Positions 4,995-26,543 are shown, numbered from the stretch's first letter. The stretch: 64,000 nt of DNA from Lepidodermella squamata (GCA_047495785.1 JBLDXI010000015.1:2480001-2544000), one strand, 5' to 3'. Numbers and translations are program-made. The notes: generated by a model from the letters alone, not told the origin.

Positions 4995-6068
4995 TTATCG
5001 GTTTAATTTTGGGCTTGCGCAAGTTCTGTGAATATTCATTTGATGCCGGTATTCAAAGTCGCAAAATTGATGCACGTATTTCCGTCGATCCAAATACATT
5101 GCTATGGTCAGGTACCGCAACGGAGCATCGCCCCATCTCCGCTCGTAAATTCTCAGTGAATCAAGAACTTCTTTCGTGAATTGCCGAATCCCCGCATTTT
5201 TCCGCCACGTTGGAACGTGCACAATTTCGAAATTGTTGTAGTACATCGGAAATTTGTAATTTTTCCGAGCTTCAACGTCGGTTGGAAACTGCGGCAATTG
5301 ATCGACTAGAATTTTCTCCCGATTTTTGGCGATGTAATCTTCCATAAAATCAACCATGCCTACTGTTACCCAGGCTTCGTCCTTTACCGCATGCCGATAG
5401 CTGTACTTGAAGTTATTTTGAGCCATAAATTGGAAAAGGTCGTAGTTTATCGGCGACTTTATGAACGAGTCAGAATCCATCCGCCAGTAGTACCGAACGT
5501 CACGCATGACTGGCTCGTAAAAAACTTGGTTAAACCAGAAAGCAATCATATTTTGATAGCCCGGATATCTGTCCTCGGAGACAATATTCCGAATCGTCCC
5601 ATTCGCCACTTTTTGCGTGAAAATTTCAGGTGGATTTATTTCTATTAAAACGAAATGTAGTAAGTCGTAATCGGTGTAGCGTAGCACTTGACACGCGCTG
5701 ATTGATTCCAAAACCGCCCATCGGTCTAAATTTTTCTCGTGAAAAATGATCACCGGATATCGAAATTGAAGATTGAAATTTTGAAACAGCAAAACTATCG
5801 ACAAGGCAATTCGGTCGATGTGCCGCTGATCGGCCAGGTACACGATAATATCTCGCGAGGCAGTTAAATTTTTCGCAGAATCTTCGGTAATAATATTAGG
5901 CTGGTTCTCCTCAGGCAACGTTTGAAGGCTTATCAAATGAAAAAAGTACCGCAGGGCAGAAATTGTTATACAAATCATTGTGAATATTAAGGTGGCGTTT
6001 AGTAGGGTGACCAAAAATCGGAAGCTGCAAACTGATCGCAGGTTAGAAGATAGGAGCCCAAGTATCAT
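4995..6068 (-). CDS. GT15 mannosyltransferase-like protein, copy 2 (tandem paralogue)
   Basis: Same motifs (YYWRMDSD, YYNNFEI, RWGDAP); catalytic region visibly very similar to 2678-3718. Confidence 0.85.
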   Translation of the reverse strand: MILGLLSSNLRSVCSFRFLVTLLNATLIFTMICITISALRYFFHLISLQTLPEENQPNIITEDSAKNLTASRDIIVYLADQRHIDRIALSIVLLFQNFNLQFRYPVIIFHEKNLDRWAVLESISACQVLRYTDYDLLHFVLIEINPPEIFTQKVANGTIRNIVSEDRYPGYQNMIAFWFNQVFYEPVMRDVRYYWRMDSDSFIKSPINYDLFQFMAQNNFKYSYRHAVKDEAWVTVGMVDFMEDYIAKNREKILVDQLPQFPTDVEARKNYKFPMYYNNFEIVHVPTWRKNAGIRQFTKEVLDSLRIYERRWGDAPLRYLTIAMYLDRRKYVHQFCDFEYRHQMNIHRTCASPKLNR

Positions 6069-7165: not shown

Positions 7166-9711
7166 TCACGGGCGTGGTACTTGTTGCCGGCCGTGGACGA
7201 AATAAGGATGAAAATGCTGAGGCGGCGGCTTGGGACTGGTTGTTGAAGTGACCCGTCTCACGTTTGGGAGAAACGGATTTTTTGGCGCATGACTTGCTGG
7301 CTCTGATGCTGTATTTGGCTTGATCGGGTGATCGGGAGTCGATGCTTTTTCATGATCGGCCGCCGTAGGGGCTAAATAAAATGAAAAACGTAACGAGAGG
7401 TACTTTCGTCAAAATGATGCTCATTATTGAAGACCAAAATTTCTTTCAAACTAAAAAAATTCTAAAATTTGAAGCAAATAAGAGCCAGCAAATTATTTCG
7501 AATTCACATTAATTTTTGACAATTTAAAAATTGGTTCGAAAATTAGCGGGTAATTCCTGACCTAGAAACAATGTTGCGCGAATCGAAGGTAAAATTGAAA
7601 CTGTGCGCGCGAATTTTTCCGATTCGTTGTGATTTCGTTTCTTGATCGTTATACTGATCTCTGCCCTTCCTGTCCCTGTGATTTTTTATCTTAGCTACAG
7701 GGTGTCCTAAATGTCTCAATTCCGGGCCCATATTAGTTCCTTCCAGTCGGAGGGTAAAAGTGGAGCAAAACGCAAAGTCGAACATTTTAGAAATTTTAAG
7801 GCCGCGTGCGGTAAAGTCAAAGGGTGTTGTTAAAATTTGTTAAAAATAATTCAACTGACGCGCATGAACCGAGTCCTGATTTTTAACAAATTTAAAACCG
7901 CGCGCAAAGATGTTGAAGGGTTACTTTCAAATATCGTGTCGGCTTTTATTCTAAACAATAATTCGGACAATTCTATATCGATTGAATATGGTTCAAAAAA
8001 TAAAAATAAAAAAATGTACGCGCACTCTAAATTCCGCGCGGTGATCAGGAGCGCGCACACTCGCAAATGGAATGTTGGAATGCTCGTAAAACCTTTTCAG
8101 ACAAATTTTTCTCGCGAGAAACCCATATTCATTTGGATAGAGAATTATTTAAGCTTCATTTTGGAATAAAAACCGCTAGGATATTCGAAAATAGCCCTTT
8201 GACATCAGCGCGCGACCAAAATGTTGTTTAAAACTTGGCGTTTTGCGCTAAGTCCACTTTTACCCTCCAATTGCGCAACCGACGCTTGGGGGCTGGACAG
8301 AGCTAATATGGGCCCGGAATTGAGCTCCTAAAAGCTATGCAGGAAAATAACTGAAGCCTTGTTCCAAGACTGTTTATATCGGAAAAATCACTTATTTGTA
8401 AAATCGGTTCTTGAAATCGATATCGGCTCTGCAGGCTGAATTATAACTAGCAAACTAACGGTTAGTAACGCAAAATTCGAGTAATATCGAGTTCTATCAC
8501 TTGGCATGATAACAAAAAATGGATAGGACTTTAAAATCTAAAAAACCATATTTTGGGAAATGCACAGCGCTGGAGTCTCAAATTTAGTGCTGGGGCCCTA
8601 ATTCGATTAGAAAAATTGTAAGTGACAATCATAAATTTGTACAACTCAAATCGAAAATCGCCTTATGCAGTACATAATTTGGCGGTCGCGTGAATCACCA
8701 CGATGACCCCAAGTTGAAATGCGCAACGGGGAATATGAAATTTTAAATCGATGATCGATTATCGATTTTTTTGAAGTGAAATAGCGAGAACGTTTTATTT
8801 CTTCGGCGTTATCAGATTCGCCAAATAACACACACTAAAAACCAACAAAGTTTCTGATACTTACTAGAAGATGAGAAGCTGCCATGATTCACTGCTTTCA
8901 ACTTTTCAATTTCGGCATTGAGCGCTTCAATTTTCGAATCTTTCTCCGTCAATTGCGTCGACATGCGAAACACGACTTTTTGCAGCGCCGCCAGGCTGCT
9001 CTGAGCTTGAGAGTTCGCCGCCATCAAAGTCACCAAGTTTTTATTCGACGCTTGTTCCGTGATTATCGCTCTTCCAGCTATCAATTGATTCGCCCCGCTA
9101 GCAATTGCAATTTGATTCTCAAGTTCGGTGATTCGAGATCGAAGGCGTTCAATTTCATCGAAATTTTGCTCGTTGGCCGTGTTTATTTCGTTATTGTCAG
9201 CCATCGCCACCTCGCTGGACAATTTCTCGTTTTCAGCCTTAATTTCTTCGAATTGTTTCTGCAATTTCGCATTTTCGAACATTAGCTCAACTTTTTCCTT
9301 GCGCAGTTGGTCGTTGCTCTTCGTCAAATTGTCAACTTGCTGCTCGAATTTTTCGGCCGAAATTTTCGAATTTTCGTACAATTTTCGGAAATTTTCCAGC
9401 TCCAGCTGCGATATTTCGTGTTCTTGCTTTAGCAGCTCGAATGAATTGTTAATTTCATCGAATTTATGCCGTGGAACGCTCGACCTAGCGTGGTCCAGCG
9501 CGTCGATGAGTTTTTCGCGTTGAACAGCTGTATTAAGGCGGAGCAGTGATAAAGCTTTGCGGTGCTCGTCTGCCATTTCGATGAAGCAAGCCACAACGTC
9601 GACGCTGAGCGGCCAGTTTTCGCGGATGACTTGAACGACTCGTTTTGATAGGCCGGCCTCGGCAATGGCGGCGGATAATTCGATAGATGGCGCTGGCGAA
9701 GGTGACGTCAT
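7166..9711 (-). CDS. Orphan protein: putative SAM-like N-terminus, long coiled coil, Pro-rich tail
   Basis: Exon 1 (9711-8865) ends at a GTAAGT donor. A phase-1 join to the acceptor at 7371 gives an open Pro-rich exon (TPTAADHEK...QVPRP*) ending at 7166. The middle is a heptad-rich E/K/Q/L segment. Confidence 0.65.
7715..8324. mobile_element. MITE with 22-bp perfect terminal inverted repeats, intronic
   Basis: CTCAATTCCGGGCCCATATTAG (7715-7736) is the reverse complement of 8303-8324. Further subterminal inverted similarity (GGAGGGTAAAAGTGGA / TCCACTTTTACCCTCC). No coding capacity seen. Confidence 0.75.
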
Positions 9712-11107
9712 TTAATTGAAAAATCCTAATTTAAAACATTAATTCGATTAATTTAAAAAATTGATGAAAAATTTCTTGAAACTAAATAATTTGGAAATTT
9801 CTTTAGGCCTGTAAAAAATGCTCAAGTTCCATTTAAAATTGACCACTAATTTTTAAAATTAATCCTAAATGTGATTAAAATGGTCCAAGATGAATTGAAT
9901 TTCTAATTTCATAGCAAGGAACCGGATGCTGTGACGAGCTCGGATTAACGGATTAAGGTGTCACGCCCACTTCGATGACAGGAAGAAAATCTGCGTTGCG
10001 TAGCTGTAATCCGGTAAATAAACAGTAAGAAATTCTGTTTCAGAGAAACAATTTACGGGCATGAGAATGGGAAAGAAAACGGGATTTATGTGCGACTGCT
10101 ATTCTAGTGCCCAGTGAAGCTTAATTCAGTGAGTTCTATACTACATGCTGGCGTTGATTATTACGAGCCTTAACGACATGAAAATGCCATGGCAGGCTGC
10201 TCGTCGATGTCATGACCCTGGTAATAAAACTCATTAGCTCATTTTCTATTACGAGGTCACTCTGTTCCTGCGTTTCAAATAAAAATAATTATACATCAGA
10301 GATTGGAAAGAAAAACGGAAGAATTACAGACGAAATTAGGGTGAGTTCTGTTTATTGTTGTGGAATTCTGGAAGCTACGAAAAGCCGTGCTATATATTAA
10401 GGCTGCCGGTGATATATGGCAGCGGCATAAATGAATGAATGCGATTTATCCTATTCACTTACCAATTTATTTTTTCATGGGCTATTTTTACTATTTATAT
10501 GTTCATCAGAGGGCGGCACACCCTTTGAATGGAAGATTCTAAGGTGTTGAGGCTATTCCTGTATATCATGTATATCCTGTAAATATAGCATATCGTAGAC
10601 CCGGCTAATAAAGCTCAGTTGCTATCAATATTACTTGCAGCAATGTACAATTACTCCATTTTCCTACCCTGATGGGTTGTACACACGGAATTAGTTTATA
10701 CAACCTTACCTACCTACGTGGGACAACTTCCGAGGATACTATTTTAAGAAAATAAAAATTACAAACTTTCTATATATTTAGACAAAGGTGGCCAGCAAAT
10801 TCCGGCGATTTCTCAAATTTCATTAACAATTTTTAACTATTAAATTTCGATTTGAAGGGCAACACTAATCGACAGGCGAAATAGCACGGCTTCTAAAAAT
10901 AGGCTGTTCAATATTTTTCAATGATTGGGTAAATCGCGCCAACTCGTTTTTATTCAGTTCCCCTGTTCACGCGTTAGGCATTCCGTTTTTTATTATTGAT
11001 GAGCGATGAAAAAGCGGAAAAAGCAAAAAAACAAACAAATTAAAATGAATGTTTTTACGAGTCACTTTCAGGCCCAGTTCATGCGAAACATAGCGAAATT
11101 GAAGATA

Positions 11108-11826
11108 TCAGATTATTTCCATGGGAATTTTCACGCAGACTAAAGGTCGCCGATATTCATCAACAATTCGTAAGGTCAAGTCCATGGAAACCTGTTATTA
11201 AATATATGTGCCTACAAAAATTGCTAACAAATCGCTATGAATTACGTGCAACGGCATTATATCTTGCACTGTAATGCCATCAATGTAACGGTAAGTTTTA
11301 CCGCGTTGCAATGGACACTCGTTGCTAAGCAAGCCTCGGGCCAAAGCAACTGCTTTCAGCGATTGACAAGCGTCGGGCAATAGTTTATCGTTGATCGGAA
11401 ATTGCAGCTGCGTTATAGTAACGTTACCGACGTGACAGTTTCCAACGTAAACCCACGTCGATAACGTATCAGTGTCGATATCTGAAAAGCATTAATAAAT
11501 TCGAATAAAATATCCTCCTTAAAAATTTATTTTTAATTTAATTTTTTTATTACGAGATTGAAAAGTGATGTCGAACTGCCAAATGGTGCCGCTGAAAACC
11601 ATGCAGTGCGGATTGACAGGGTCGTAGGATATCAAACATGGTTCGAAGTTGAAATGAAGGAGTTTTCCAACTCGAGAATCGGCTTGAAAAAATCAGAAAT
11701 TTGTCAAAAGAATATTGAATTGATTATAGCTTTATTACTGCAATTTTCATACAGGTCGGTTTCATCAAAGAAACCAGCTCGAATCGGAGGAAAAATTGAA
11801 AATAGAAATAAACAGGTTAAAAACAT
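11108..11826 (-). CDS. Secreted ML-domain (NPC2/MD-2-related lipid-recognition) protein 1, 4 exons
   Basis: Spliced translation: MFLTCLFLFS...YENCTDSRVGKLLHFNFEPC...PHCMVFSG...DACQ...CPLQRGKTYRY...VSMDLTLRIVDEYRRPLVCVKIPMEII*. This shows the NPC2 cysteine pattern and the CPLxxGxxYxY motif. Confidence 0.8.
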
Positions 11827-11872
11827 GTTTTTCTCAAGTCACAAAGTGCGATAAGTAAGGACATATTTTTTA

Positions 11873-12476
11873 TTACAAAATCTTGCATGTTACAGGGAAA
11901 CATGCAATAATGCCAGATGCGAAGCTTTCTGCGTCTGTCGTATCAGCCACCAGCTGAACTCGGCCGATGGCGATAAGCTAAAAATAGGAAAGTTGGTCGA
12001 ACTGAAAAATATGAGTACAAGTAAAAAATTACCGGCGCTGGTAAATAATCGGGAATATGTAACGCGACGTTATACGTGTAATTTCGGCCCATCTCCAGGC
12101 GGGGCGATGCTTCATCGCAGTCGACCTCGAGAAAATTGCGGCAATTATGCAGTAAGGGGACGTACTGGAATAATTCAGGGGAAAACAGTGGCAGCAGGTT
12201 TCGATTCTCGTCTAACCAGCCGGCGAACACTTTATCAACCTTCAGCAGCAGGCTGACTTTGTTCGCATTTTCAACCGGCTTGTTCAGGCGAAATTGAACT
12301 TTGACCTCGACATTGCCGCCAACCATAGCCTCGCATTGCTTGTCCGAGTTGACTGGTAGAATTTCGAACTTTAGGCTTTCGGCTAGAAACTGGTCCCAAT
12401 CGTTAGGACAGCGCTTTGCCAGTAGACATGTGCGAAACAGAACGCAGACGATAATAATTAATTTCACAGAAATCAT
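11873..12476 (-). CDS. Secreted ML-domain (NPC2/MD-2-related) protein 2, 2 exons
   Basis: Signal peptide MISVKLIIIVCVLF, then 'C...GGNVEVKVQF' and 'LEMGRNYTYNVALHIPDYLP'. Intron 12032-11978 leads to a last exon ending IACFPVTCKIL*. Confidence 0.75.
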
Positions 12477-12601
12477 TTTGGCAAAATGACACAAGAAATC
12501 ACGATATGGTAGCAATTAATTCGACGCGACAGATGTTTAATTATTTCACGTACCTACGTGATTTACAAGGAAAACTTAACATTTATTATTTTTTAGTCAA
12601 A

Positions 12602-15600
12602 ATGAATTTCTCTGCAATTATGCTCCTCATTTCTTGTCTGGGTCATCGCTGTTATTGCTTTGACCTATTTCAGTGTGATGGTGCGGCCTTAAATCCTGTA
12701 ATTAAAGAATTTCCTGGCGAGTTTTCGGCCAATGTCAGTGAAATCGCTGCGGAACAAGAAGTTGCATTCAACTGTTCGTGGCATTTTGCAACTGATGAGG
12801 GTTACTTCATTCGATTTCGTTTTTCTCACCTCAATTTACACTGGTGCGAAAATCACTGCGCCGACGAGCAATGTTCGTCCGTTTCGATTTACTCATTGGC
12901 GAAAAATTCCAGCCTGAGTCTTGTCCATCAGAGGCAGTGCTCATCCTCGGCGCCAGATTATCCTTTCACGACCGAGACTAATGAAGCCGTATTAGTGTTC
13001 ACGGTTCGCCAATTCAAGCAGGAAAAACGCTTCTGGAGTGACTTCTTTTTAGACTACAAGCCCAGCAAAAATAAGAGGGCTTTTACGATTTACTTCGAAA
13101 AAGGTAGACGATATTGAAAAAAATTGACATTATTATACTTATTTTGGTAGTTCCAACTCAAATCAGCCTCGAAGATTCTCTGAACTGCAACAAAACGGTT
13201 GAATTACATGGGGACCTGTTCACCTATGGAACAATTCACAGCTTTATCCGAGCATCTGGGCTTTACCGGCCTAATGAAAAATGCAAATGGCTGATTCGAT
13301 CCAACAGCCCTTTCGGCCAGGTGCGTTTCAAATTCCGCCACACTGACCTGCAGGACATGTGTGGCTGTCGGAACCTCGAAGCGTGCGTCGCGAATTGCCG
13401 CCGCGATTTCGTCTCGATATGGAACGGCCGCAGCGAATTCACGTCGCCACTGGTAACGCGGCGATGCGGTTTGAGACTTCGGTTTTGCTTTGCCTGGTCT
13501 ACGAGCAATGAAGCTCTAGTAACCTTTGAAACGGACAGCCGCGTCGAATTTCCGATCGGGTTCATCCTGGACTATCAAATTGTGCCCGGAGACCATCTTC
13601 CATCAGGTTAGATTACCATTCCATCACCAAGTAGGCATGTATGTATCATTCATTTCGAACTTCCGCACTGCCTCCTTGGTGTGAGCTATATTGTTATATT
13701 GGTGTGAGCTTTAAGGTGACTCCTTTCCAAAAACTCCTAAGCCCTGTTAAAGCGCGCGCTGGGTTCAAAAGAATGTTTAGAACATGCGCTTCAAAGGTTT
13801 ATTTATTTATTTAAAGAGCCATAACGCCCAGAAGAGGACAGCTCAGACAAGTGATCAATAGAAAAGTAAAGACAACAACAACATTGAAAATCGAAATAGC
13901 ATAAATAGCAGACTGATCGGGATCACTATCGAAATCAATGCAATGATCAACATAACATGAAAAATATATGAATATTCAACAATCAGAGCAGAGCGGCATT
14001 AATGTTGTTGTAGTGTAGATAAGCCGCTTGGCGACACGCCTTCGCTGACTCCGCTTCGTGAACGCTCGAAGGCATTTGATTCCACAAGTGCGGGCCACGG
14101 TACGACATGCTTAGCTGGCCTCGCTCGGATGTGTAGGTCGGTTTAAACATGGGTTCGAAATTACGGCAGCTGTAGCCGTGGCTGCGATTGTTCAGCTTAA
14201 ACAGCAACGTTAATTCATCCGGCGCCATCTTGTTCAGGCTCTTCCACATGAGTGTACATAGGTGCATCGCATGTTTCTGGCCGACTGTTAGCCGGATCCG
14301 CCAATGGATGAGCGCCGTATATGATTTTGATATAGCTCGATCCTGTGACGATTGCAGTTTGTCGCGAGTCGATTTTGAGGCCTGTCCGAGGGTGAGGTCG
14401 CCATAATTCAGATGGCTGAAGACGAGGCCATTTGTCATCATAACAGCAGTTTTGCGATCGATTCCAGCGTTGACAGCTTGTTTGAGAGCAATCAGGCCTT
14501 TTCGGGCTTTGCCTTTGGCCATCTCGACGTGCTCATCCAATTGTAGCTTGTTGTCAATTTTGAAACCAAGGGTATCCGTGATTTCTGACGGCTTTATCGC
14601 AACTCCTCCGATTGTGACCTTGAAATCGGGCGCTGTCGAGAGGTGTGGCTTGAGAAACATGAATTCCGATTTTTTCCCATTTACTGCGAGGCTGTTCTGT
14701 TTTAGCCATGCGTATACCCTGTCAAGTTCCAGTTGCAGAACTGAGTGGCGTTCGTTGATGTTCTTCGATCTGTAAAAAATTGTAATGTCGTCGGCGTATT
14801 GTGCTATACCGCATCTCCTTAAAATCAAAGGCAGGTCGTTTACACAAATTGTAAACATGAGTGGCCCAAGGACCGATCCTTGTGGCACACCGCAATCAAT
14901 TGACTCGAACGGGGATGCTTCGCCGTTGATTTTCGTGGTTTGGCGGCGATTGCTCAAGTAGTTAATCAATAGGCGAATTGACTTTTCCGTTACACCAGCA
15001 GATCGGAGAGATTCGATAATCCCATGGTGGTGGAGCGTGTCGAAGGCTTTGGATAAGTCGACCGACACGGCTCCAACCACGTTTCCTTTGTCAAGTAGAT
15101 GTCGCCAGCGTTCGGTGAACGATGCCACGCAGGTGTCAGTCGAATGGTATTGACGAAATCCGTGTTGTGCCGGTGTTAAGAATTTGATCGCTCGCAAATG
15201 ATCTTTCAGCTGTGTTGCCAGGCAACGCTCGAACGTACGAGCTAGCGGTGAAGTGATCGAAATCGGCCTAAAATTCCCAACCGCAGCCTTTGATCCGGAC
15301 TTATGCAGCGGTGTGACAACAGCCGTTTTCCAATCACTGATGAAGACACCATCTCGAATGGCCAAGTTGAAGAGCGCTGTGAGATGCCGAGCAATTGAAG
15401 GCTTTGCCATCTTCACGATGCACTCGGGAATGCTGTCGAACCCGGTCGTAGCCTTGTAACTCAGTTTGTCGATCGCTTTTTCGACATCGGTGACCGAGAC
15501 AGGTCGAAAAATAAACGGCGTTGAGGTTCGTTTACGTCTTGCGGAGTTCAGACAGCCTCCGAGACTTTCGGCCACGATTTTTCCTGCTTGTGAGAAGAAC

Positions 15601-18600
15601 TTATTGCGATTTTTTGTACTTTTTCAGCACATGTACGGAAAAAGTACGGAAAATGTGCAGAAAGGATTTATTTGAGAAAAAGTACGGAAAAAACACGGAA
15701 AAACCTTCCGTATTGCAATAAAACCAAGTACGGAAAATGTACGGAAAATGGATGATTTCATAAATTTCAAAATTTCGTATTTTTCAAAACAGATTTGCCT
15801 GAATTTTAACATTCTGCGCAGGCTCCAATAGCAAGTCTTCAGAATATGCAAACCTTTGTCGCGATGTTTCAAGGTTTTCATAGAAAACCCGCGCGTATCC
15901 AAAATTTTGCAGTCGGCGCATTTTTGCAGTGTTTGAAGCGAGCTTTCTCGCGATAAAGGATCTGCATCCGGGATTACTTTCCAGAAGTGTATTTGAGAGG
16001 ATATTCTTTCTCTGCGATTCGGAAACTTCGTAGAGGATGCATTTAAAAACTGCCGCAATTTCGCATATTAGCACGTCTACGGCGTTTCGCTATATTTTCT
16101 CCGGTGTTTAGAATAGAATTGATACTACTTTATATTGATTTCTCAACTTGACGCATAGGAAATTTAAGGCATAAGAACTTAATTTTCTCTCTTAATTTTC
16201 GAACACCACAAGCTTTTCCAGAAAAAGTAATTCCACAAGCGGGTCGATGCGGCCGCCGTTTAAACATTCCTACTAAGATGAATGTAAACTTAACCTGGTT
16301 AACCTATCATTTCTGAAAGTTCGAAGTCTGCGCACCATGATAGTCCGAAAACCGAACAACATAAGATGCGTAATAATTTATAACATTCGAATACATTTAA
16401 CGCTTAACGCGGAATTTCACTCAACTTCCGCCACTTTTGACCCGTTTTAAAGCATCTTTTGACATGGAAAACGACGCAGCGGAGTTTTGACAATTACACC
16501 TTAAATAAAGTTAGATGTTAGATAGCAGATGGCAGGTTGTTTCATCACAAAAAATTCTCATTGGATCGCATGAGAATGTATGGAAAAAATCGGCAGATTG
16601 ATTAGTGGCGTTTTGCAATAACTCATCTCTTGATAGCTGCTTCCAGATGTTGCGGTTCTTTGGCTTGGGAGGAAATTTTTGACGATTCGCAACAATTTTC
16701 GCGGGTCGTTGCCAGCCTCCTTAACTCGTAGACGATATCGAGCACGGCGCGCCTTGCGTCTTTGTCGTTGGCGTTGTCGCCGCGTGAGCGTTGGATCAAA
16801 GTGCTTCTTCTTGGCTTGGCGATTTCGCTTTTTAGCTTGTTCTTTGTCGATCAACGGGGCCACTTCGTCCATCACTGCTAGAAGCCGGAGTTTGATTTGA
16901 GACCAGAAAGTTTCGCAATCGTCCGACTCGTTGACCGTCGCAAGTTTCTCCTGTAGTAGTTGATTGATCGTTCAGTATCAACACTGTTGTAGTCGCGAAA
17001 TTTTGAATTTGTCTGGGATTTCGATTTTTCCTCGCCGCCGTTATCAAGAACCAACGATGTCGCGTAGTGGTCGCTGAGACCCATGATCGTGCCAGTTTGC
17101 GCTATTTCGGCCTGAGGAATGTTGGCCCAGAAGTGATCTAGGCATTTCTCAGACGCGGGTCGGGTTACTAGTTAGGTGTAGGCTGGTCGTAGATCGAAGT
17201 CAGCAAACACTCGAAGTCATCGCGCTGGCAACATTTACGTCACGTAGGTTCCAGTTGAAGTCTCCGCCGATGATGTGGTAGTCAGCCGTGATGTCTTTGC
17301 AGAGAAGAAGAAATTCCTCTAAATCGTCGGCATCGTTGTTATTGAACTCGTCGCTGGAACCCTTGGGTCGCCTGTAGATCGTGGTCATAGAAAGACCTTT
17401 CCCGAATGGTAGTGTTAAGTGCGGTTCACAAACTCTTGTGTAAAATACACATTCATGATTCATCGTTCTTTTCTTACGCGCAAAATTCATCTTTTGCAAA
17501 AAACGGTCGCATGGCCATTTGAATCATGAACGATGAACGAAACCCGCTCACAAATTATTTTTCATAATTCATGATTCAAATAGCGATTTTTTGTGTGCGC
17601 CTTCGCATCGATAAAAGAAAGGAAGCCGCCACCGAGCACAGAACCCAGTATTCTGGTTTAGCATGGTCAGAGCTAAACCACTATGCTACTAGCGAGCTTC
17701 GGTGATTGGTGGCGTTACTGTCATCATCTTCCATTTTTGCTGTTGACTTGATTTTTGCAATATCAGAACTGCAAAACTAGCGCAAATTAAATTTTCGAAT
17801 TTTTTAGACTGCATTGCCCGCTTTAACGCTAGCCCGCATCAAATTTCGGATTCATAGCAATAGCCGATATAATCATCGCCAAAAATGACTGACTCGAATA
17901 TAGTTTGAAGCCCAATTATTTATACTTCTGAAAAATGTATCGGTGTGGACTAATTAATATCGGCCCAATCAGAGTGATCTAGCCTCTAGCCGAAGATAAA
18001 GGTCAAATGATGTTATTTATGGAATGGATTTTATGGAAAATCATCGAATTTTTAATGAAATTTTTTCAGTAGCTCAGAATATCTAAGTTAACAGCGAGAA
18101 TAGGAGATAATGACGATAACGCTCACATAAAAAAAAAGCTCACTGGTGGCACAGTGGGTTCAACTCGAACTACCATGCCCAGTGTAGTGAGTTCTGTGCC
18201 TTGCGGGCGCACTCCTTTTTAGATCTAAATCGCGCACATGAAAAAATGGCTAAACAGCTTCTTGAATCATGAATTATGACTAATAATTTGTGAGCGGGTT
18301 TCGCTCATCGTTCATGATTCAAGTGAGCCTGCAACAAATCTTTTGCATCATTCATGTGGAAAACACGAGTTTGTGAATCGCCCTTTTACAACGCATTGAT
18401 AATTTTCAAAGACTTTCGATGACAGCGATGTGTTTGTCAAATGTCAGGTCAAATGTCAAAGGACCTTTGGCGGTTTTAATACCAAAGTTAACTCAGACAA
18501 TGTTTCATCGAATGAATATTTTGTTCGAATGTGAAAAAATTGAAACGAGCACTCTCAAAGCACCCGTGACGAGCTATTCCAGCACATAACCAGCTCACAT

Positions 18601-20855
18601 GAATTTTCCACGCGTGAACCAAATAGTCATTCGATGAAAATTGTTCGAGTTTCATTTTGGTATAATATAAAAACTGCCAATAGAAGAAGAAAAAAGAAGG
18701 CGTGTAAGGACGTTCGGAATGACTGATACCTAAAGGCCCACTTACTCGAGAGGAGCCCGTTGGCATTTGACATAATTTGAAGCGTGAAGTCTTCTTCAAT
18801 TTCTAACTTGAACTTTGTGTCCACTTTTCATTGGCTGAATTGTTGCTTTTCAGATAAACATCATTTCGAACAGTATACCCAGTTGATAACTCTGGATACC
18901 GGTCAGAATGGTGTTATCACGAACTACCGTCGAAGTGACACAGGGAAGTATCGAGCAAATGAAAAAGTAGAATACATTTTCAAGCTACCAACCGGATGGA
19001 TGCTCAGGTTTTTGGCTTTTCAAAGATATTGTGAATTGTGAAATGAAAGACCAAATTTCGTTCAGCTTCCGCAAGATAAGTTGGGACATGGAAAGCGCAC
19101 CATATGCTAATTATCACGATGTCGATAATTATCGAGGAAGGATGACTAGTGATTGCCTAATTTTTTTATGGTATACAGAATTGAACGAAAATTGGAAAAC
19201 ACTTATGAACCGTGTCATTGATGCTTCACTCATGGAATTTGTTCTGATTGATTTTATGTCTGACGAACGCCGCGAGCTGACCGGTTTCAATCTCTCCTAC
19301 CAATATGCCAACGTCACTGACCACGAAAAGTGCATACGAACCAATGTTGTTCCTGCTTCTGAACAGGGTCAAATTTCTAGCCACATCCGCCAGAGCGGTA
19401 CCTTTCGATACGGAGAAAATTGCTCGTGGGCCATCTCGTCGGAGAAAAAAAACTCTCGGCTACGACTCTTTTTCACCCGAGTCAATCTCGATCCCTGCCC
19501 CAGAAATTTGTCTTCTTGCGAATGTAATTACGTTCAAATTTTCGATGGTCTCGGCGAAGAATTCCCTCCATTAACACCAAAACTATGCGGACTGAATTTG
19601 ACAAATTTCACAAAAATCACATCAAGCGGCCGCGGGGTTTTAGTCAAATTCGAAACGTACGATTTCGACCCTACCTTATCTGAAGATCCTGTGGGAGATG
19701 GATTTCATCTAATCTATGAGACTATCTATGACGATGTGGCGGCAGCTTTACCAGTCACGATATCTGCAATGGTTGGCGCAATAATTGTGGCAGTCGTCAT
19801 CGGAGCGATAGCTACAGCTTTCTCTAAGCTCTACTACGACAGGAAAACAAAAAGGCTGTTGGCAAGTCGGAAGAAAGTTGTCCAGACTATATTAGCTGAT
19901 ACCTACATTGTGCCGCTGCCCCATATACAAGACTTGCTGGAAGCTATGGGCATCCAAGAATACAGCGAGTTGATCGAAACACTGACCATTGAAACTAAGG
20001 ATATCAAATTTCAAGAGAGTTTGGATCAAAATATCGGCCAAGGCGCTTTCGGGGTTGTATCGAAGGGCGTACTGTGTAACTCGACTCAAGTTGCCTTGAA
20101 ATCGTTGAAAACTGTTCACAATTGCGATGAATTGCTGGCGTTTTTCAAAGAAGGCCTCATAATGCAAACCCTTGACCACCAAAATGTGCTCAAATTGTTG
20201 GGAATCGTTTTGCTTCACGACCACGGCGAGCCGAATCTTGTGTTCCCCTTCATGGAAAACGGGTGTTTGCGTGATTTTCTTTGGGGGAGATTCGATCGAT
20301 GCTATTTTCATGTCGATTTTATGCGGCAAATTTGCTGTGGCATGGCGTACTTGTCGCGAAAAAATTGCATCCATCGCGACTTGGCTTGTCGAAATGTTCT
20401 TGTTGATGGCGATTTTACGCTGAAAATCGGTGATTTCGGCTTTGCGCGGAAAATGAATGACGACAGCAACTACTATCAGATTAGGCAGAAAATAAAAGTC
20501 CCCTATCGCTGGTATCCGCCCGAGGCCCTCAAAGAGCCGTTTGTCTTCAAGCGAAAAAGTGACGTATGGTCATTCGGCGTGACGTGTTGGGAAATTTTCG
20601 AATCCCCCAACAAACTCCAGCCTTTCGGCAATCTCGGCCCTGGGGAAGTTATTGCTAGAATTTGCTCCGGTAAGCTACTGGAAAAACCCGAATTGTGTTC
20701 TCCGGAAATGTAAGATAGTATTTAGCCTTAATTTTTACATTAGAGTGACGAAAATTTTTAGATACGACAATATCTTGCTGAAATGTTGGCGAGCCACGGC
20801 TAATGAAAGGCCTAACTTTGACCAATTGCTTGATTTAATTGAAATGCTGTGCTGA
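12602..20855 (+). CDS. Receptor tyrosine kinase with ~4 extracellular CUB domains (CUB-RTK 1)
   Basis: In-frame exons 12602-13103, 13151-13606, 18854-19007, 19066-20709 and 20762-20855. Features: signal peptide; CUB motifs (NCSWHF, CKWLI...DFVSIWNG...F.LDY, CSWAI...NYVQIFDG...GFHLIY); single TM helix; kinase motifs GQGAFG, VALK, HRDLACRN, DFG, PYRWYPPE, SDVWSFG and CW...RPNF. Confidence 0.85.
15608..16610. mobile_element. ~1-kb non-coding insertion nested in the LINE ORF
   Basis: Removing it rejoins ...SSYQEMS to KFFSQAGKIVAESL in frame. It carries repeated TACGGAAAA motifs near its left end. Exact ends and TSD are ambiguous. Confidence 0.6.
17418..18385. mobile_element. PIF/Harbinger-type foldback MITE with TTA target-site duplication, nested in the LINE endonuclease
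   Basis: TTA at 17415-17417 and 18386-18388. Long imperfect inverted arms (GCGGTTCACAAACTC / GAGTTTGTGAATCGC; 17521-17579 vs 18263-18321). Excision restores the frame ...FENYQCVVTLPFGKGLSMTTIYRRP. Confidence 0.8.
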
Positions 20856-20942
20856 ATTGAAAAGACAACTTGATGCTTTATGATTATATCTAAGTAACTT
20901 TGCTTGCTTAATTCAAAATCGCGGTTTTTGTGTTTAATTTAG

Positions 20943-23900
20943 ATGCGATTTGTCTCTTTATTTGTGGTGGTTGTTGCGATTTCCTACGGCACAGTTTCAG
21001 GCCAAGCTTCGAATCGTGGGTTTTTTCTTAATCTTTTGAAAAAGATTCTTGAGATAGCCGCCAATAACTTCAAACCTCGTTGCGATGATACAGTGGAGAT
21101 AACCTTCGAAAACGCGAGTGAAACGATCAGAGTTGTCAGCGGCGTAACCTTCAATGTTGATAAGGATTACAAAAAGTGTTGGGCAGTAAAAGCGGAAAAT
21201 GGCCACAAAATAAGATTCACTGTTCAGCATTTAAACTTCGAGCACTGCGCTCTGTACTGTTACCAATGCCACAGCTTGGCGTTTTACGACGTGAAAGGGC
21301 CGAAATTGTGGAATTATTACTTGCAAATTCTGCGCAAACAATGCACGAGATACAAGCCGCCCTATTCATTTCTGAGTGCGGAAAAAGATGCCATGATGGT
21401 TCTCCATCTAGACAGCAAGCATAGAATCGGGCACCGAAATTACACGGTAAAAATTGAACAAGGTATGCTAGCTGTGGAATACACAACATTTTGTTATAAC
21501 TATAATTTTCAGTAAGAAATGATTATCTGGAATTGGATAATAGCACCTGTGGCGGCGAAATTCCGAGCTCAGTAAGATCTGGTACGATTCAAAATTTCCT
21601 GCTGCAAAATGGTAGCTATCGCTTGAACGAAAACTGTACTTGGGTTCTGAAGTCACCCGACCGACATCACGTTCTAAGATTCACCATTCGGGCCATCCAC
21701 ATGCCAGGGAGATGCTCGCCCGCCAGCAATGACTTTGATGATTATTGCAAGAAAGAGTGTTACAAGCTTGGAGACTACTTGGAATTGCGAAATTCGCCTG
21801 AGGAGAAAATCCACAACCTCCTATGGACCAGCTGCAGTAAATGGCCGCCAATGAGACGTTTCACTCCTAGAACTCAATCTGCACTTGTACGATTTGTAAC
21901 TGGCCCTGTGCGATATTCAAAAATTAATCCATTACCGGCTGGGTTCATTTTGGATTTTGACGGTTAGAAATACGCTTTTCTTTCAATACTGATGTGTAAA
22001 TAGCGCAATTATCAGTCGTTAGCGCTGATTACATTGGCGGCGTTTACTCATTTGGAGAGAGTGATAGAAACCCGGAATTCGTCAAGCCATTCGAGTCTTT
22101 CCTAATTTCGAGCTATAAACGAGCTGAAGATGGCTTTACAAGGAGGAAAGATGTAACAGAAAAAACTTTCGAAACCACGGAAGGTTATTCGTTCCGAGTC
22201 CAGACGATCTCAATTAGTCTGACGTTTTACAACACAGAAATTTCTGGTGCAAAGGGCGATGGGTTAGTAGGATCACGATACCAGTTAAAAACAATTGACG
22301 CGCCTGGCCTCGTGAGATTAACAGTGGAGTCATCATTTACATTAAGCTTGTCAACTTTCTTCCCCGTTCAAAGTGAAGGCTTCAACATAAGCATTACATC
22401 AGTCAGCCGATACGACTACTCTCGGAAATGTCATGGTGGCTCATCGGGAGTTTACACAATGACTGCTGATCAAACAACCAAAATTCTTCAAAATGAGAGA
22501 AGGCAAATAGACGGTAAGTATCGGATGTATGAAGACTGTCAATGGACGATTTTGTCTCCGGGGCGCGATTACATTCTCGAAATCATCGTTACATATGCCT
22601 TCATCGATGGCGAACAAGATTACCTGAAAGTTTCCGACGAATCCAACGAAAATGAGTTGACCATCGGCCCGAAGTATGAAAATAGCAAAATTCGCAATCA
22701 ATCTTTTGTCACTAAGTCTAGCTCGGTCCTGGTTCACTTCTACGTTAACGATTTATATGACAATCATTCTGGTGATGGTTTCATCCTGACATATCAAGCA
22801 ATTCACGTTGATGATGATGAAGGTAACATGGAAACGGCAATTGTAATATTTTCTGTCAGCATTGCCGCTCTGCTGGCATGTATCGTCGTATTCTTGCTAA
22901 TTGTGAGATGGCACAGGCGAAAATTAGCTGCTGAAAAAGAAAAGTGAGTTTAGTGATAACAGTTCCTCCTTAAAAATGTCAAATGATTTTTTAGGAGAAG
23001 AATTTTGGACGCGATGCTGAAGGAGCCCTACGCTCTTCCATCCGATAGTTTTGAAGCTATGTTGAAGGAATATGGCTGCGAACGTTTGATAAACCTCGTC
23101 GAGCGGCTGAATATTCCGGCAGATCGTATCGAGTTTTCTTCCGATGGCAGTGGAGGATTTCGGACATCAACTGGGGGTGAAATCACCCAGGGAAATTTTT
23201 CGAAAGTCACCCGAGCTAAGCTCGTTTGTGAAGATGGTGTCCACCTTGCTATCGCTCTGAAGCACTTGAAGCCAAGTGGTCAACGGCAGGATGATGTCAT
23301 TCAAATTCTTCGTGAGGCATTCATAATGCAATCTTTGGACCACGAAAATGTCTTGCCGCTTCTGGGAATCGCTGTTTTGAAAGAAACGCCGAATCTGGTG
23401 TTCCCATTCATGAAAAACGGCAATTTGAAGAGTTATCTGTCTACCCCGCGATTGCAAGTGACAAACGGCAAACTAATCAATTTTTGCCGCCAGATTGCGA
23501 ACGGCATGGTCTATTTGCATTCCAAGAACTTTGTCCACTGCGATTTGGCCTGCCGAAACGTTCTGGTTGACTTGGAACTGACTTTGAAGATCAGCGACTT
23601 CGGGCTGGCTAAAGATGCCGACCCAGCAATGACCCGGTTGTACGAGCCGCTTACGACTGATAACGACGGAAAGGAGGAACAAGAAAACGACTGTCCATTG
23701 CCGGTTCGGTGGTCACCGCCTGAGTTCTTCAATAGGCCTCGAATAGTTTCGTTAAAGAGCGACGTTTGGTCATACGGCGTTGTTTGCTGGGAAATTATGT
23801 CGCGTAATTACGAGGCAGCAGCTATTTTTGCTTTATGTATAACTGTGTTAATTTTCAGTTTGCCAAACCGAGCCTTACTCGGACTTGCGAAAGGTTACGG

Positions 23901-24070
23901 ATGTGATTGATTTTATTTGTTCCGGCAAACGTCTCGAAAAACCAGCTCGTTGTAGTGATGCCATGTTCGCGGCCATTGTACTTCCTTGCTGGAAAACAAA
24001 CCGGGTGGAACGACCCGATTTCCAAGAATCGCTGTCAAAGCTTGAGGAATCATTTACGGAGAGCGAGTGA
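20943..24070 (+). CDS. Receptor tyrosine kinase with ~4 CUB domains (CUB-RTK 2), non-RD catalytic loop
   Basis: In-frame exons 20943-21462, 21513-21962, 22016-22943, 22995-23803 and 23859-24070. Features: signal peptide; CUB motifs (KCWAV, NCTWVL...DYLEL...GFILDF, DCQWTI...DYLKV...GFILTY); TM helix; kinase motifs IALK, HCDLACRN, DFG, PVRWSPPE and SDVWSYG. Confidence 0.85.
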
Positions 24071-24409: not shown

Positions 24410-26543
24410 CTAGAGCTGCATTGGTGGATGTGCAGCTGTGAGAGCTGAGAGAGGAGTTAGATTGCACCCATGCACGCTCCAGTGTGGCAGATTGTCCGCC
24501 ACGCGTTTTGCCTCCATTTGTTCCTCAACACCTAAATCATCGCTCCACCACCGCTTTTTCTCCGCGCCGTTCGTACTGTGGTGTAGCAGCGACCGATTAT
24601 CCTCGAAAGCCCGTAGATCGCACCAGAATGTGTAGTCATTCGTAAACCAAGCGTGGCGTTTGAATTTAGCACAACCAGCGCGATTCCGCGCGGATAGCTC
24701 CATCATTTTACGCACGATATCGCGGCCCTCCTGGCTCACGTCGTTCCAAGCGTCGGGTTTGAAGAAAACCTTCTCATCGCCAACTTGCGCCTTCATGTTC
24801 TCGTGAGGATTGTACGGGAAGACGCCGGTTAGCGATACGTAGACTACCACGCCGCATGCCCAAGTGTCGAGGGAGTTGTTGAAATTCGGAGTTTGGCAGA
24901 TAGCTTCAGGGGGCAGGTAATTCATCGTGCCAACAAATGATCCACGTCTAACTGAGCCTTTGTTCAAGATTCGACTGTAGCCGAAATCGCACAGCTTAAT
25001 CTGGAGCGGAGAAACAAACAAATTTATGAGAGCAACATTCACAGTTTTTGAGCAGGTCACCTGAGGGAAAGGATGTCGCTCGACCAGGAGAACATTCTCG
25101 GGCTGTACAGTAAGAAAATAGGCTTTCAAGATAAATAGGGAGAAGTAATGAACCAACCTTGATGTCGCAGTGAACGACGTCAAATTTGTTGAGAAATGCT
25201 ACCGCCGAGAGAACTTGATATGTGATGAACTTTGTGACGCGTTCGTCAAGTCTTCGATTTGGCTGCTCCAGTATAAAATTAAGGAGGCTAAACATTCGGG
25301 AAAATTCAACGTTAGTCAAAACGTGAAAATCCCTCGAAACCTAGAACCCTAAATCCTAAGTCCTAAATGTTAGCCTGATGTTGATTCTCGATATTGCTTT
25401 GATCCTAACTCTGACTCTAAAACTAACCCTATCCCTAACCTTAGCCTTTGCCCTGATCCTTACCCTCATCCTCTAATCCCAACCATTATCCCCATTCTAG
25501 CAGCCATTTTCATTTTATTTAGGAATCCTAACCCCAACCCCAACCGTAACCCTAAATCCTCGTTTTTAGCCTAATGTTGATTCTCGATATTGCTCTAACC
25601 CTAACCCTAACCTTAACCCTAATCCTAATCCTAACTCTAAGTCTAAAGCTGACCCTATTCCTTATTCCTAACCTGATCCTTAGTCCTAATATCTTTTAAT
25701 CCCAACCCTTGTCCTCACTCTAGCAGCAATTTTCATTGGATTTATGAACCCCGATCTTTGAAATGAACTTACTCGCCATGCAGCTTTTCGGTAGCTATGT
25801 AGATTTTGTCCTTGGTATAGTGGAGTCCTAGGATGCGTATAACACCCGGGTGATTGAGCATTTTAGGTATTTGCGTCTCCGGCTTCAGTTGTTTGATGCT
25901 GGCTTGAGCGTAGTCGATCGCTTTCAGAGCGACAAGCTCTCCACTCGACCTCTGCAGCGCTGTATACACTATGCCATACTGCCCCTGGCCCAACACGTTA
26001 TTCATATTGATTTCGTACAATTCATGGATGTTGCAGTCTGTCTGAACTCGAGGGATCCACACCATGCGAAGAGTTGACATCCAGTTGTTGTAGTACTCGA
26101 ACAATTGTTCAGGGGCTGAGGGTAGAAATGCGATTTCGCTAGGGGTCCTCGTTGATGGCTGACGGTTTCCAACATACAAAATGGTTCCAACAGCACGAAT
26201 TATAAAGAAAAATGGTGAATCTTGACCAGCTTCTTCAACTGCAATAATTTCCTCGAGCTAAAATCAAGAAATTAGAGTGGATTATTGAATTATTCCTAAT
26301 TGTTACCAAAACTTGAACATTAGGCTTGCAACGAGGATCAATTCCATTCGGGTAAAGCGAAACAGCTTGCCGGTTGAGACGCCAGTAGGCGGTTGTCAAA
26401 ACGGTGATATCTCTGGAGAAGGATGATTCAACCCAGCCTTCGAGGATGACATCCCCTAGCTGGCTGTCACGCTTCACCGACGACTTGTGACTCTGTGTTA
26501 ACGGGCGTTGTAAGAACGCCGTTGATCCAGGCGGCTGTTGCAT
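24410..26543 (-). CDS. Protein kinase D-like kinase (PH + kinase domain), paralogue A
   Basis: PKD hallmarks EGW...YWRL, VLGQGQYG, EKLHG, VHCDIKPENVLL...PFPQIKLCDFG, LTGVFPYN and W.DLR.FE. Multi-exon; start codon uncertain. Confidence 0.8.
25330..25745. repeat. Degenerate (CCCTAA)n telomere-like tract arranged as two ~200-bp tandem units, intronic
   Basis: Runs such as CTAACCCTAACCCTAACCTTAACCCTAA. Shared blocks ATGTTGATTCTCGATATTGCT and CTAGCAGC..TTTTCATT each occur twice. Confidence 0.7.

What the first reader, a model, noticed from the sequence alone, without database searches (positions are those of the whole stretch)
11108..24070. Candidate lipid-sensing receptor cassette: two ML (MD-2/NPC2-like) proteins head-to-head with two CUB-ectodomain receptor tyrosine kinases
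Seen: two secreted ML-domain genes on the minus strand and two multi-CUB/TM/tyrosine-kinase genes on the plus strand are packed together. The divergent ATGs are ~125 bp apart, the ML genes 46 bp apart and the RTKs 87 bp apart. Known: ML proteins such as MD-2 present lipids to a membrane receptor (TLR4), and CUB domains are ligand-binding modules of cubilin, neuropilin and complement C1r/s. Inference: this could be a co-regulated soluble lipid carrier plus RTK sensing system, possibly immune or nutrient-sensing, analogous to MD-2/TLR4.
Basis: partly seen in the sequence, partly recalled or inferred. Interest (0 to 1): 0.8.

Follow-up and report, generated by a model that had tools for sequence, protein, structure and literature searches.

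The report
ML-like genes beside CUB receptor kinases
Two small secreted, probably lipid-carrier-like genes really do sit back to back with two unusual cell-surface tyrosine-kinase receptor genes in this compact invertebrate genome, but nothing I could test shows that they work together, so shared neighbourhood is the more likely reading.

Summary
The geometry is exactly as reported. Start codons diverge by 125 bp, the two small genes lie 46 bp apart, and the two receptor genes lie 87 bp apart. All four genes give intact GT-AG models.

- RTK1 spans 8.3 kb, because intron 2 (5.2 kb) is a transposon nest.
- Each ectodomain has three CUB or CUB-like modules plus one unassigned module, so it is not all-CUB.
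- The ML label is only probable. ML-B hits Pfam ML below threshold (E=0.018) and NPC2 structures weakly. ML-A has no sequence relative among 1.84 billion proteins, and only protein-language-model features point to ML.
- ML-A and ML-B share one intron position despite having no BLAST similarity.

Spliced RNA-like contigs cover both ML genes, and weakly the first RTK1 exons. RTK1 and RTK2 are old sister paralogues (37% kinase identity). RTK2 has HCD in place of HRD and a degenerate glycine loop.

No relatives or synteny could be found, and both structure predictions failed. The MD-2/TLR4-like carrier-plus-receptor idea therefore stays untested.

Earlier notes of this scan, which I did not check, put ML/NPC2-like genes beside several unrelated families and describe many domain-shuffled RTK clusters. 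That fits incidental adjacency, perhaps with shared transcription.

The scan had already noted this same stretch (s1-398282) and a CUB-RTK on other DNA (s1-394127).

The parts
11108..11826 (-). ML-B: a four-exon gene for a 178-aa secreted protein, probably ML/NPC2-like. Exons: 11826-11739, 11682-11554, 11481-11246, 11191-11108. The 3'UTR reaches at least 11025.
   Evidence: Exon 3 scores PF02221 E=0.018 at profile positions 61-106. Three NPC2 chains are among its four PDB hits, at the motif CP-x4-KTY-x-Y. The Atlas top hit is ML, at 0.83. An X1 contig carries the 54-nt intron joint 11192-11245. Loose ends join exons 1 and 2, and contig ends fall at the exon ends 11554 and 11481.
11873..12476 (-). 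ML-A: a two-exon gene for a 182-aa secreted protein with six Cys after the signal-like segment, possibly ML-like. Exons: 12476-12033 and 11977-11873.
   Evidence: The Atlas language-model search gave 0.92, with 202 of 256 features shared and 20 of 30 hits in ML families. No Pfam, PDB, word-search or phmmer hit was found. The 55-nt intron is supported by an X1 loose end at 11978. The phase-0 intron lies 19 residues after the G of G-[KR]-x-Y-x-Y, exactly as in ML-B.
12477..12601 (.). The 125-bp divergent spacer between the ML-A and RTK1 start codons. It holds the palindrome TCACGTA-CC-TACGTGA (12546-12561) and a splice-acceptor-like TTTTTTAG five bases before the RTK1 ATG.
   Evidence: Read from the sequence. 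X1 depth here is close to zero. Promoter function is inferred, not shown.
12602..20855 (+). RTK1: a five-exon gene for a 949-aa receptor. Order: signal-like segment, CUB1, CUB2, unassigned module 3, CUB4, TM (19748-19822), tyrosine kinase. Exons: 12602-13103, 13151-13606, 18854-19007, 19066-20709, 20762-20855.
   Evidence: Pfam CUB E=7e-4, 2e-7 and 3e-7, and PK_Tyr E=3e-63. Motifs GQGAFGVV, VALK, HRDLACRN, DFG, YY and PYRWYPPE are present. Best PDB matches are the MET/RON, JAK, ITK and IGF1R kinases. Only the 58-nt intron 19008-19065 keeps the frame; the 42-nt alternative runs into stops. X1 contigs lie on exons 1-2 at low depth. Exons 3-5 have no RNA check.
13607..18853 (+). RTK1 intron 2, a transposon nest. 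It holds a degenerate antisense non-LTR retrotransposon (RT ORF 13983-15575, minus strand; further broken ORFs up to about 17500) and an element of about 830 bp bounded by 84-nt inverted repeats (17506-17589 and 18252-18335).
   Evidence: RVT_1 E=7.5e-34. The donor GTTAGA and phase 1 match those of RTK2 intron 2. An X2 DNA contig departs from the window at 13616.
20943..24070 (+). RTK2: a five-exon gene for a 976-aa receptor with the same module order. TM is at 22837-22905. The kinase has HCDLACRN (non-RD) and the glycine loop TQGNFSKV. Exons: 20943-21462, 21513-21962, 22004-22943, 22995-23803, 23859-24070.
   Evidence: PK_Tyr E=9e-55. CUB hits are E=0.0076 and 0.0016 and E=5e-4. BLASTP to RTK1: CUB1 E=2e-9, CUB2 E=2e-10, CUB4+TM E=3e-9, kinase 37% identity with E=2e-52. 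Introns 1 and 2 share position and phase with RTK1. The start codon is directly preceded by TTTAATTTAG.

Best explanation
This is a compact neighbourhood of two gene pairs that each arose by old local duplication.

The first pair is two sister receptor tyrosine kinases specific to this lineage. The outer part of each is CUB1, CUB2, an unassigned module and CUB4.

The second pair is two very diverged, small, secreted, Cys-containing, beta-rich proteins that probably belong to an expanded ML/NPC2-like family.

The receptors most likely work like ordinary single-pass RTKs: an unknown ligand bound by the CUB array brings two chains together, and they phosphorylate each other.
- RTK1 has every catalytic motif, plus a twin-tyrosine activation loop.
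- RTK2 has HCD for HRD and a degenerate glycine loop, so it may be a weak or regulatory partner (inferred).

The ML-like proteins most likely carry small hydrophobic molecules outside the cell or in the gut or lysosome, as NPC2-type proteins do (inferred from family).

The 46-bp and 87-bp same-strand gaps and the acceptor-like sites at the start codons fit the spliced-leader operons that other agents report for this genome. Each pair may therefore be co-transcribed, and the 125-bp spacer may serve both directions (inferred, not shown).

I take the meeting of the ML-like pair and the RTK pair as neighbourhood in a gene-dense genome, not as a matched carrier-receptor system.
For: Gene models are intact and in frame. 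Spliced RNA-like contigs cover both ML genes.

RTK1 and RTK2 are sisters (100/98) in a tree that also holds ACK, ALK/ROS-like and PDGFR-type kinases. They share introns 1 and 2 in position and phase. They are only 27-37% identical, so the duplication is old.

ML-B carries an ML signal from three methods. ML-A carries it from language-model features. The two share an intron position.

No CUB domain appears among the 88 kinase relatives, and the ectodomain has no relatives, so the family looks lineage-specific.

Earlier notes, unchecked, report ML/NPC2-like genes beside unrelated families (s1-407685, s1-430068, s1-410494). They also report many RTK clusters with other shuffled ectodomains (s1-387727, s1-393953, s1-393971, s1-374011) and spliced-leader operons (s1-374120, s1-374127).

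NPC2-like gene expansion is published for a flatworm (PMC6979364, found).
Against: The head-to-head spacing of 125 bp is tight, and both pairs are old yet still together. That could reflect selection for linkage.

All three genes that could be checked are present in the same RNA-like sample.

The ML identity of ML-A rests on one method only. No fold, no ligand and no expression pattern is known. Operon transcription and the leader were not seen here. RTK1 exons 3-5 and all of RTK2 lack RNA support.
Confidence: 0.6

Rival explanations
1. The ML-like proteins are soluble carriers that hand a lipid or microbial molecule to the CUB ectodomains of RTK1/RTK2. The four genes form a co-regulated sensing cassette, analogous to MD-2 with TLR4.
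For: The arrangement is head to head with a 125-bp spacer and has operon-like gaps of 46 and 87 bp. ML-A, ML-B and the RTK1 5' exons all appear in the one RNA-like data set. A perfect 7+7 palindrome lies in the shared spacer. RTK2 is a non-RD kinase, a trait that from my own knowledge is enriched among innate-immune receptor kinases. ML proteins that bind LPS and feed Toll signalling are published for shrimp (PMC9832027, found).
Against: There is no test of binding, co-expression or conserved linkage. Earlier notes place ML/NPC2-like genes of this genome next to several unrelated families, and describe another CUB-RTK locus without naming an ML gene there (s1-394127, unchecked). The text search for papers holding the ML-domain, NPC2, co-receptor and receptor-tyrosine-kinase terms together listed none that describes an ML protein paired with an RTK. 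The MD-2 and TLR4 genes are themselves unlinked (own knowledge). The palindrome is expected by chance about once in 20 such spacers.
Confidence: 0.08
2. The small genes are not ML-domain proteins but orphan secreted proteins of another beta-rich fold. The 'lipid carrier' premise then fails, at least for ML-A.
For: ML-A has no hit in Pfam, PDB, the word search or phmmer against 1.84 billion representatives. ML-B stays below Pfam's cut-off (15.9 against 22.7 bits). ML-A and ML-B show no BLAST similarity. The AlphaFold model is unusable.
Against: Exon-by-exon scanning splits the domain score. Three methods point ML-B to the same family, at the right profile position. For ML-A, the Atlas score of 0.92 with 202 shared features is in the range the tool gives for true family members. 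Size, signal-like segment, six Cys, predicted strands and the intron position shared with ML-B all fit.
Confidence: 0.2
3. RTK1 is a decaying copy, and the locus effectively holds one working receptor. The 5.2-kb transposon-filled intron would hinder splicing, or exon 3 would not be used.
For: RTK1 intron 2 is 100 times longer than the other introns and is full of mobile-element remains. The most obvious 42-nt intron after exon 3 breaks the frame.
Against: A canonical 58-nt intron restores the frame and the whole 949-codon model is open. All kinase motifs are intact. The element is antisense and confined to the intron, and donor and phase match RTK2. X1 contigs do lie on exons 1-2.
Confidence: 0.12

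Closest known systems
MD-2 (LY96) with TLR4, and MD-1 with RP105
   Same: A small secreted ML-fold protein that could hold a lipid, next to a single-pass surface receptor.
   Different: That receptor is LRR-TIR, not CUB-tyrosine kinase. In that system the partnership is defined by a physical complex, which is untested here. The vertebrate genes are not neighbours (own knowledge).
NPC2 / Der p 2-type ML proteins and their expansions in invertebrates (for example Clonorchis sinensis, PMC6979364)
   Same: Signal-like segment plus one domain of about 150 aa with six Cys. The motif C-P-x-x-x-G/K-x-Y-x-Y in ML-B aligns to NPC2. Several scattered family members are noted in this genome.
   Different: ML-A and ML-B are far more diverged than usual. 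Neither reaches Pfam's cut-off when scanned exon by exon. No sterol or lipid binding is known.
Neuropilins and CDCP1 (CUB-bearing membrane proteins that signal through separate kinases)
   Same: CUB modules form the ligand-binding outer part of a signalling receptor. Signalling is by tyrosine phosphorylation.
   Different: Here the CUB array and the tyrosine kinase are one polypeptide. Neuropilin and CDCP1 have no kinase domain (own knowledge).
Lineage-specific RTKs made by ectodomain shuffling (Venus kinase receptors, choanoflagellate RTKs; holozoan tyrosine kinome survey PMC8662651)
   Same: A conventional tyrosine kinase of the receptor type is joined to an ectodomain not used by the classical RTK families. 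The genes are tandemly duplicated.
   Different: The module set is CUB-CUB-unknown-CUB. The word 'CUB' does not occur in the main text of that survey. The kinase groups with none of the sampled families.
Spliced-leader operons of nematodes, flatworms and tunicates
   Same: Same-strand gaps of 46 and 87 bp. An AATAAA overlaps the ML-A stop codon. Acceptor-like sites lie at or next to the downstream start codons.
   Different: No leader and no polycistronic RNA was seen at this locus. The two genes of each pair are paralogues, unlike the unrelated genes typical of operons.

Membership tests
ML / MD-2-related lipid-recognition domain (Pfam PF02221) | Match to the family profile at or above the curated cut-off (22.7 bits) | tested here: inconclusive
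   ML-B exon 3 scores 15.9 bits, E=0.018, at profile positions 61-106 of 133. ML-A exons give no hit. Exons had to be scanned apart, which splits the score.
ML / MD-2-related lipid-recognition domain (Pfam PF02221) | Secreted single-domain protein of about 130-160 aa with a conserved set of about six cysteines | tested here: met
   Both have an N-terminal hydrophobic segment. ML-A has six Cys after it and ML-B seven. Total lengths are 182 and 178 aa. Disulfide pairing is not testable.
ML / MD-2-related lipid-recognition domain (Pfam PF02221) | Immunoglobulin-like beta sandwich with a hydrophobic cavity | tested here: inconclusive
   The AlphaFold2 single-sequence model of ML-A exon 1 has pLDDT 42. 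Mostly strands are predicted, but the model is unusable for fold search. No homologues exist for an alignment.
ML / MD-2-related lipid-recognition domain (Pfam PF02221) | Binds a lipid, sterol or lipopolysaccharide | not testable with these tools
   This needs recombinant protein and binding assays.
CUB domain (Pfam PF00431) | Match to the family profile at or above the cut-off (21.4 bits) | tested here: met
   RTK1 CUB2 scores 31.5 bits and CUB4 31.2 bits. RTK1 CUB1 scores 20.3, RTK2 CUB4 20.7 and RTK2 CUB2 17.0, all just below. RTK2 CUB1 is linked only by BLASTP to RTK1 CUB1, E=2e-9. Module 3 of both receptors has no CUB signal by Pfam or by hhalign against the six local CUBs, so the ectodomain is not all-CUB.
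Receptor tyrosine kinase | Signal peptide, one transmembrane helix, and a cytoplasmic tyrosine-kinase domain with HRDLAxRN and P-x-x-W-x-x-PE | tested here: met
   PF07714 E=3e-63 and 9e-55. TM segments lie at 19748-19822 and 22837-22905. Motifs were located. RTK2 deviates, with HCDLACRN and glycine loop TQGNFSKV. Top PDB matches are tyrosine kinases.
Named RTK families (MET, insulin receptor, ALK/ROS, PDGFR, ROR and others) | Kinase domain nested inside that family, with that family's ectodomain | tested here: not met
   RTK1 and RTK2 form their own pair (100/98), outside the ACK, ALK/ROS-like and CSF1R/FLT3 samples. None of the 88 relatives has a CUB domain. The sampling was small.
MD-2/TLR4-type carrier-receptor system | Physical complex of the ML protein with the receptor ectodomain, and ligand-dependent signalling | not testable with these tools
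   No complex prediction or assay is available. Single-chain models failed.
MD-2/TLR4-type carrier-receptor system | Co-expression of carrier and receptor in the same cells | tested here: inconclusive
   The one pooled RNA-like run holds contigs of ML-A, ML-B and RTK1 exons 1-2. Contigs cannot give levels or cell types.
Spliced-leader operon | Same-strand genes about 100 nt or less apart, with a trans-splice acceptor before the downstream start codon | tested here: met
   The gaps are 46 and 87 nt. AG is flush with the RTK2 ATG, and an AG lies six bases before the ML-B ATG.
Spliced-leader operon | Leader sequence on the downstream mRNA and a polycistronic precursor | not tested
   The single read-laying run showed no leader-bearing loose end at 11832, 12597 or 20942 among the rows listed. 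The leader is reported only in earlier notes (s1-374120, s1-374127).

The most novel reading that the evidence does not exclude
Two divergent spliced-leader operons share one 125-bp control region. One operon makes two ML-fold carriers. The other makes a catalytically full CUB-RTK and its non-RD partner. The carriers would deliver a lipid or microbial molecule to the CUB array. This would be the first ML co-receptor system wired to tyrosine-kinase signalling instead of Toll/TIR signalling.
Probability: 0.07. Interest if true: 0.8.

Novelty: new variant of a known kind. Interest (0 to 1): 0.3.

Why it matters
If the ML-like proteins really fed ligands to CUB-bearing tyrosine-kinase receptors, the MD-2 principle (a soluble lipid-holding co-receptor) would extend to a second great class of animal receptors. 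It would also give a rare genomic handle on ligand discovery for orphan RTKs.

As it stands, the locus mainly adds to a picture of a little-studied animal, probably a gastrotrich. This animal has built many receptor tyrosine kinases by shuffling ectodomains, here CUB modules, and has a diverged, scattered ML/NPC2-like family. The locus is a reasonable but low-odds candidate for a co-expression or binding test.

Tried and rejected
1. AlphaFold2 on ML-A exon 1 and on RTK2 module 3 plus CUB4, as single sequences: pLDDT 42 and 31. The models were unusable, so no fold search was run.

2. Relatives of ML-A: the word search, phmmer over 1.84 billion representatives, and Pfam and PDB on the whole exon and on sub-pieces all gave nothing.

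3. Relatives of the RTK ectodomain: the region-restricted word search gave nothing. Two metagenome scans gave only a generic CUB exon on a 3-kb contig (L001) and a distant kinase (L002), neither of any use for synteny.

4. Module 3 as a cryptic CUB: rejected by hhalign against the six local CUBs (probability 0.3%) and by Pfam.

5. RTK1 intron 3 as 19008-19049 (42 nt): this breaks the frame. I considered a GG-AG non-canonical intron or a frameshifted pseudogene. I dropped both for the canonical 58-nt intron 19008-19065, which keeps the frame.

6. I briefly took the genome for a larvacean tunicate, on intron size, gene gaps and G+C. I rejected this because no near-identical proteins exist in the public collections. 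The published Lepidodermella squamata assembly (122 Mb, 157 contigs, 43% G+C; PMC11660948) fits the scan's figures. The organism label remains a lead, not a test.

7. ATG 12506 as the RTK1 start would put 32 residues before the hydrophobic signal-like segment. ATG 12602 is preferred.


Full report
**What is there**

The window is a compact animal genome of about 41% G+C with introns of 41-72 nt. In 11108-24070 I find four genes.

On the minus strand:
- ML-A: exons 12476-12033 and 11977-11873, 182 aa.
- ML-B: exons 11826-11739, 11682-11554, 11481-11246 and 11191-11108, 178 aa.

On the plus strand:
- RTK1: exons 12602-13103, 13151-13606, 18854-19007, 19066-20709 and 20762-20855, 949 aa.
- RTK2: exons 20943-21462, 21513-21962, 22004-22943, 22995-23803 and 23859-24070, 976 aa.

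All twelve introns are GT-AG and the exon sums are multiples of three.

**RNA evidence**

One search for public runs gave two holders. X1 is marked as a guess at RNA. It behaves as RNA:
- It has no depth over the intergenic stretch 9628-10883.
- Its contigs stop at exon ends (11481, 11554).
- One contig carries the joint that removes 11192-11245.
- Loose ends join ML-B exon 1 to exon 2, and ML-A exon 1 to exon 2.

Both small genes are therefore transcribed and spliced as modelled. X1 contigs also lie on RTK1 exons 1 and 2 at low depth. These are contigs, so levels cannot be compared.

X2 is DNA, 97-99% like the window and too close for comparative use. One of its contigs leaves the window sequence at 13616, inside RTK1 intron 2.

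**The receptors**

Both carry a tyrosine-kinase domain (PF07714, E=3e-63 and 9e-55). The best solved matches are MET/RON, JAK, ITK and IGF1R kinases.

RTK1 has GQGAFGVV, VALK, HRDLACRN, DFG, a YY activation loop and PYRWYPPE. RTK2 has TQGNFSKV, IALK, HCDLACRN, DFG, one loop tyrosine with an insertion, and PVRWSPPE. RTK2 is thus a non-RD kinase with a weakened glycine loop.

Each has an N-terminal hydrophobic segment and one transmembrane segment. Both end right after the kinase domain, without a tail.

In the outer part, Pfam CUB is significant for RTK1 CUB2 and CUB4, and borderline for RTK1 CUB1 and for RTK2 CUB2 and CUB4. RTK2 CUB1 is tied to RTK1 CUB1 by BLASTP (E=2e-9).

The third module, about 135 aa, gives no CUB signal by Pfam or by a profile of the six local CUBs. 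Between the two receptors it is only marginally alike (E=0.07). The ectodomain is therefore CUB-CUB-unknown-CUB.

The two receptors share the position and phase of introns 1 and 2, including the donor GTTAGA. They are 27-30% identical in the CUBs and 37% in the kinase.

In a maximum-likelihood tree of 24 kinase domains they are sisters (100/98). They fall outside the sampled ACK, ALK/ROS-like and CSF1R/FLT3 groups.

None of the 88 kinase relatives found carries a CUB domain. The ectodomain found no relative at all.

**RTK1 is not compact**

Its intron 2 is 5247 nt. It holds a degenerate non-LTR retrotransposon on the opposite strand (RT ORF 13983-15575, RVT_1 E=7.5e-34). It also holds an element framed by 84-nt inverted repeats.

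After exon 3, the nearest acceptor (19049) would shift the frame into stops. The next acceptor (19065) gives a 58-nt intron and an open frame. I therefore read RTK1 as intact, with the caveat that this junction has no RNA support.

**Are the small genes ML proteins?**

ML-B exon 3 matches Pfam ML (PF02221) at E=0.018, over profile positions 61-106. That is below the cut-off. Three of its four weak PDB hits are NPC2, aligned at C-P-x4-K-T-Y-x-Y. Its best Atlas cluster is ML, at 0.83.

ML-A exon 1 has no hit in Pfam, PDB, the word search or phmmer against 1.84 billion representatives. The language-model search puts it with ML families at 0.92, with 202 shared features and 20 of 30 hits.

ML-A and ML-B have no BLAST similarity. 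But both have a phase-0 intron exactly 19 residues after the G of G-[KR]-x-Y-x-Y. That argues that they are distant paralogues.

I put ML membership at about 0.85 for ML-B and 0.7 for ML-A. The exons were scanned apart, which lowers every profile score.

**Is it a system?**

Nothing I could run tests binding, co-expression in the same cells or conserved linkage.

The protein collections and two metagenome scans hold no relatives from which synteny could be read. Both structure predictions failed for want of an alignment.

The text search for papers holding the ML-domain, NPC2, co-receptor and receptor-tyrosine-kinase terms together listed none that describes an ML protein paired with an RTK. 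The word 'CUB' does not occur in the main text of a survey of the holozoan tyrosine kinome (PMC8662651).

Earlier notes of this scan are AI leads that I did not verify. They say that:
- ML/NPC2-like genes of this genome also lie among esterases, class C GPCRs and ion channels (s1-407685, s1-430068, s1-410494).
- Another CUB-RTK lies in a CUB cluster for which no ML gene is mentioned (s1-394127).
- The genome holds many tandem RTK families with other borrowed ectodomains (s1-387727, s1-393953, s1-393971, s1-374011).
- The animal, probably the gastrotrich Lepidodermella squamata, uses spliced-leader trans-splicing with operon-like clusters (s1-374120, s1-374127).

The published assembly figures for that species (122 Mb, 157 contigs, 43% G+C; PMC11660948) fit the scan's own counts.

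Against that background, the 46-bp and 87-bp gaps and the acceptor-like sites at the start codons are best read as the genome's general packing. They possibly reflect two divergent operons, not a special cassette.

The shared spacer holds a perfect palindrome, TCACGTA-CC-TACGTGA. By my estimate, such a repeat is expected by chance about once in twenty spacers of this size.

**Verdict**

The carrier-plus-receptor reading is neither supported nor excluded. I give it about 0.07.

The receptors are a new variant of a known kind: RTKs made by ectodomain shuffling. The ML-like genes are diverged members of a family that has expanded in a flatworm (PMC6979364).

The joined spliced proteins were not searched or folded. 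That step is listed under referred steps.

Noticed in passing
window 13607-18853: RTK1 intron 2 is a transposon nest. It holds an antisense, degenerate non-LTR retrotransposon (RT ORF 13983-15575) and an element of about 830 bp bounded by 84-nt inverted repeats (17506-17589 and 18252-18335). It also holds a short tandem array at 15611-15748. An X2 DNA contig leaves the window sequence at 13616, so the intron content seems polymorphic.
   Followed up: partly
window 23536-23559 and 23185-23208: The RTK2 kinase has HCDLACRN instead of HRDLAxRN (non-RD) and the glycine loop TQGNFSKV. Its sister RTK1 is canonical. RTK2 may be a low-activity or regulatory partner.
   Followed up: partly
window 12546-12561: A perfect palindrome, TCACGTA-CC-TACGTGA (two inverted TACGTG cores), lies in the 125-bp spacer between ML-A and RTK1. 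By my estimate, chance expectation is about 0.05.
   Followed up: no
window 12033 and 11246 (exon ends, minus strand): ML-A and ML-B share a phase-0 intron exactly 19 residues after the G of G-[KR]-x-Y-x-Y, although BLAST finds no similarity between them.
   Followed up: yes
window 2678-3718 (-), 4995-6068 (-), 58813-59847 (-): Three uninterrupted ORFs match Glyco_transf_15 (E=1e-20 to 3e-23). From my own knowledge, these KTR/KRE2-type alpha-1,2-mannosyltransferases are best known from fungi. That is unusual in an animal genome and a possible transfer or lineage-specific retention.
   Followed up: no
window 24410-26179 (-), 31086-31652 (-), 37613-38164 (-): A tandem family of Ser/Thr protein-kinase genes (Pkinase hits on 24410-25183, 25769-26179 and 31086-31652) starts about 340 bp beyond the RTK2 stop, on the other strand. 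They share C-terminal tails. The copy at 37613-38164 is placed by likeness to 31086-31652 alone and was not scanned.
   Followed up: no
window 40789-42141 (-), 54266-55615 (-), 61710-62876 (-): There are Cys-loop ion-channel gene pieces. The first two stretches are near-identical duplicates, and the third is a separate subunit with both Pfam halves.
   Followed up: no
window 48904-57987: A family of two-part genes (ORFs of 208-222 aa; two kinds of ORF that pair up) is repeated on both strands without any Pfam match.
   Followed up: no
L001 1911-2291: A 3-kb metagenome contig carries a single ordinary CUB exon, 31% identical to RTK1 CUB4, with no kinase nearby. It was of no use for synteny.
   Followed up: yes
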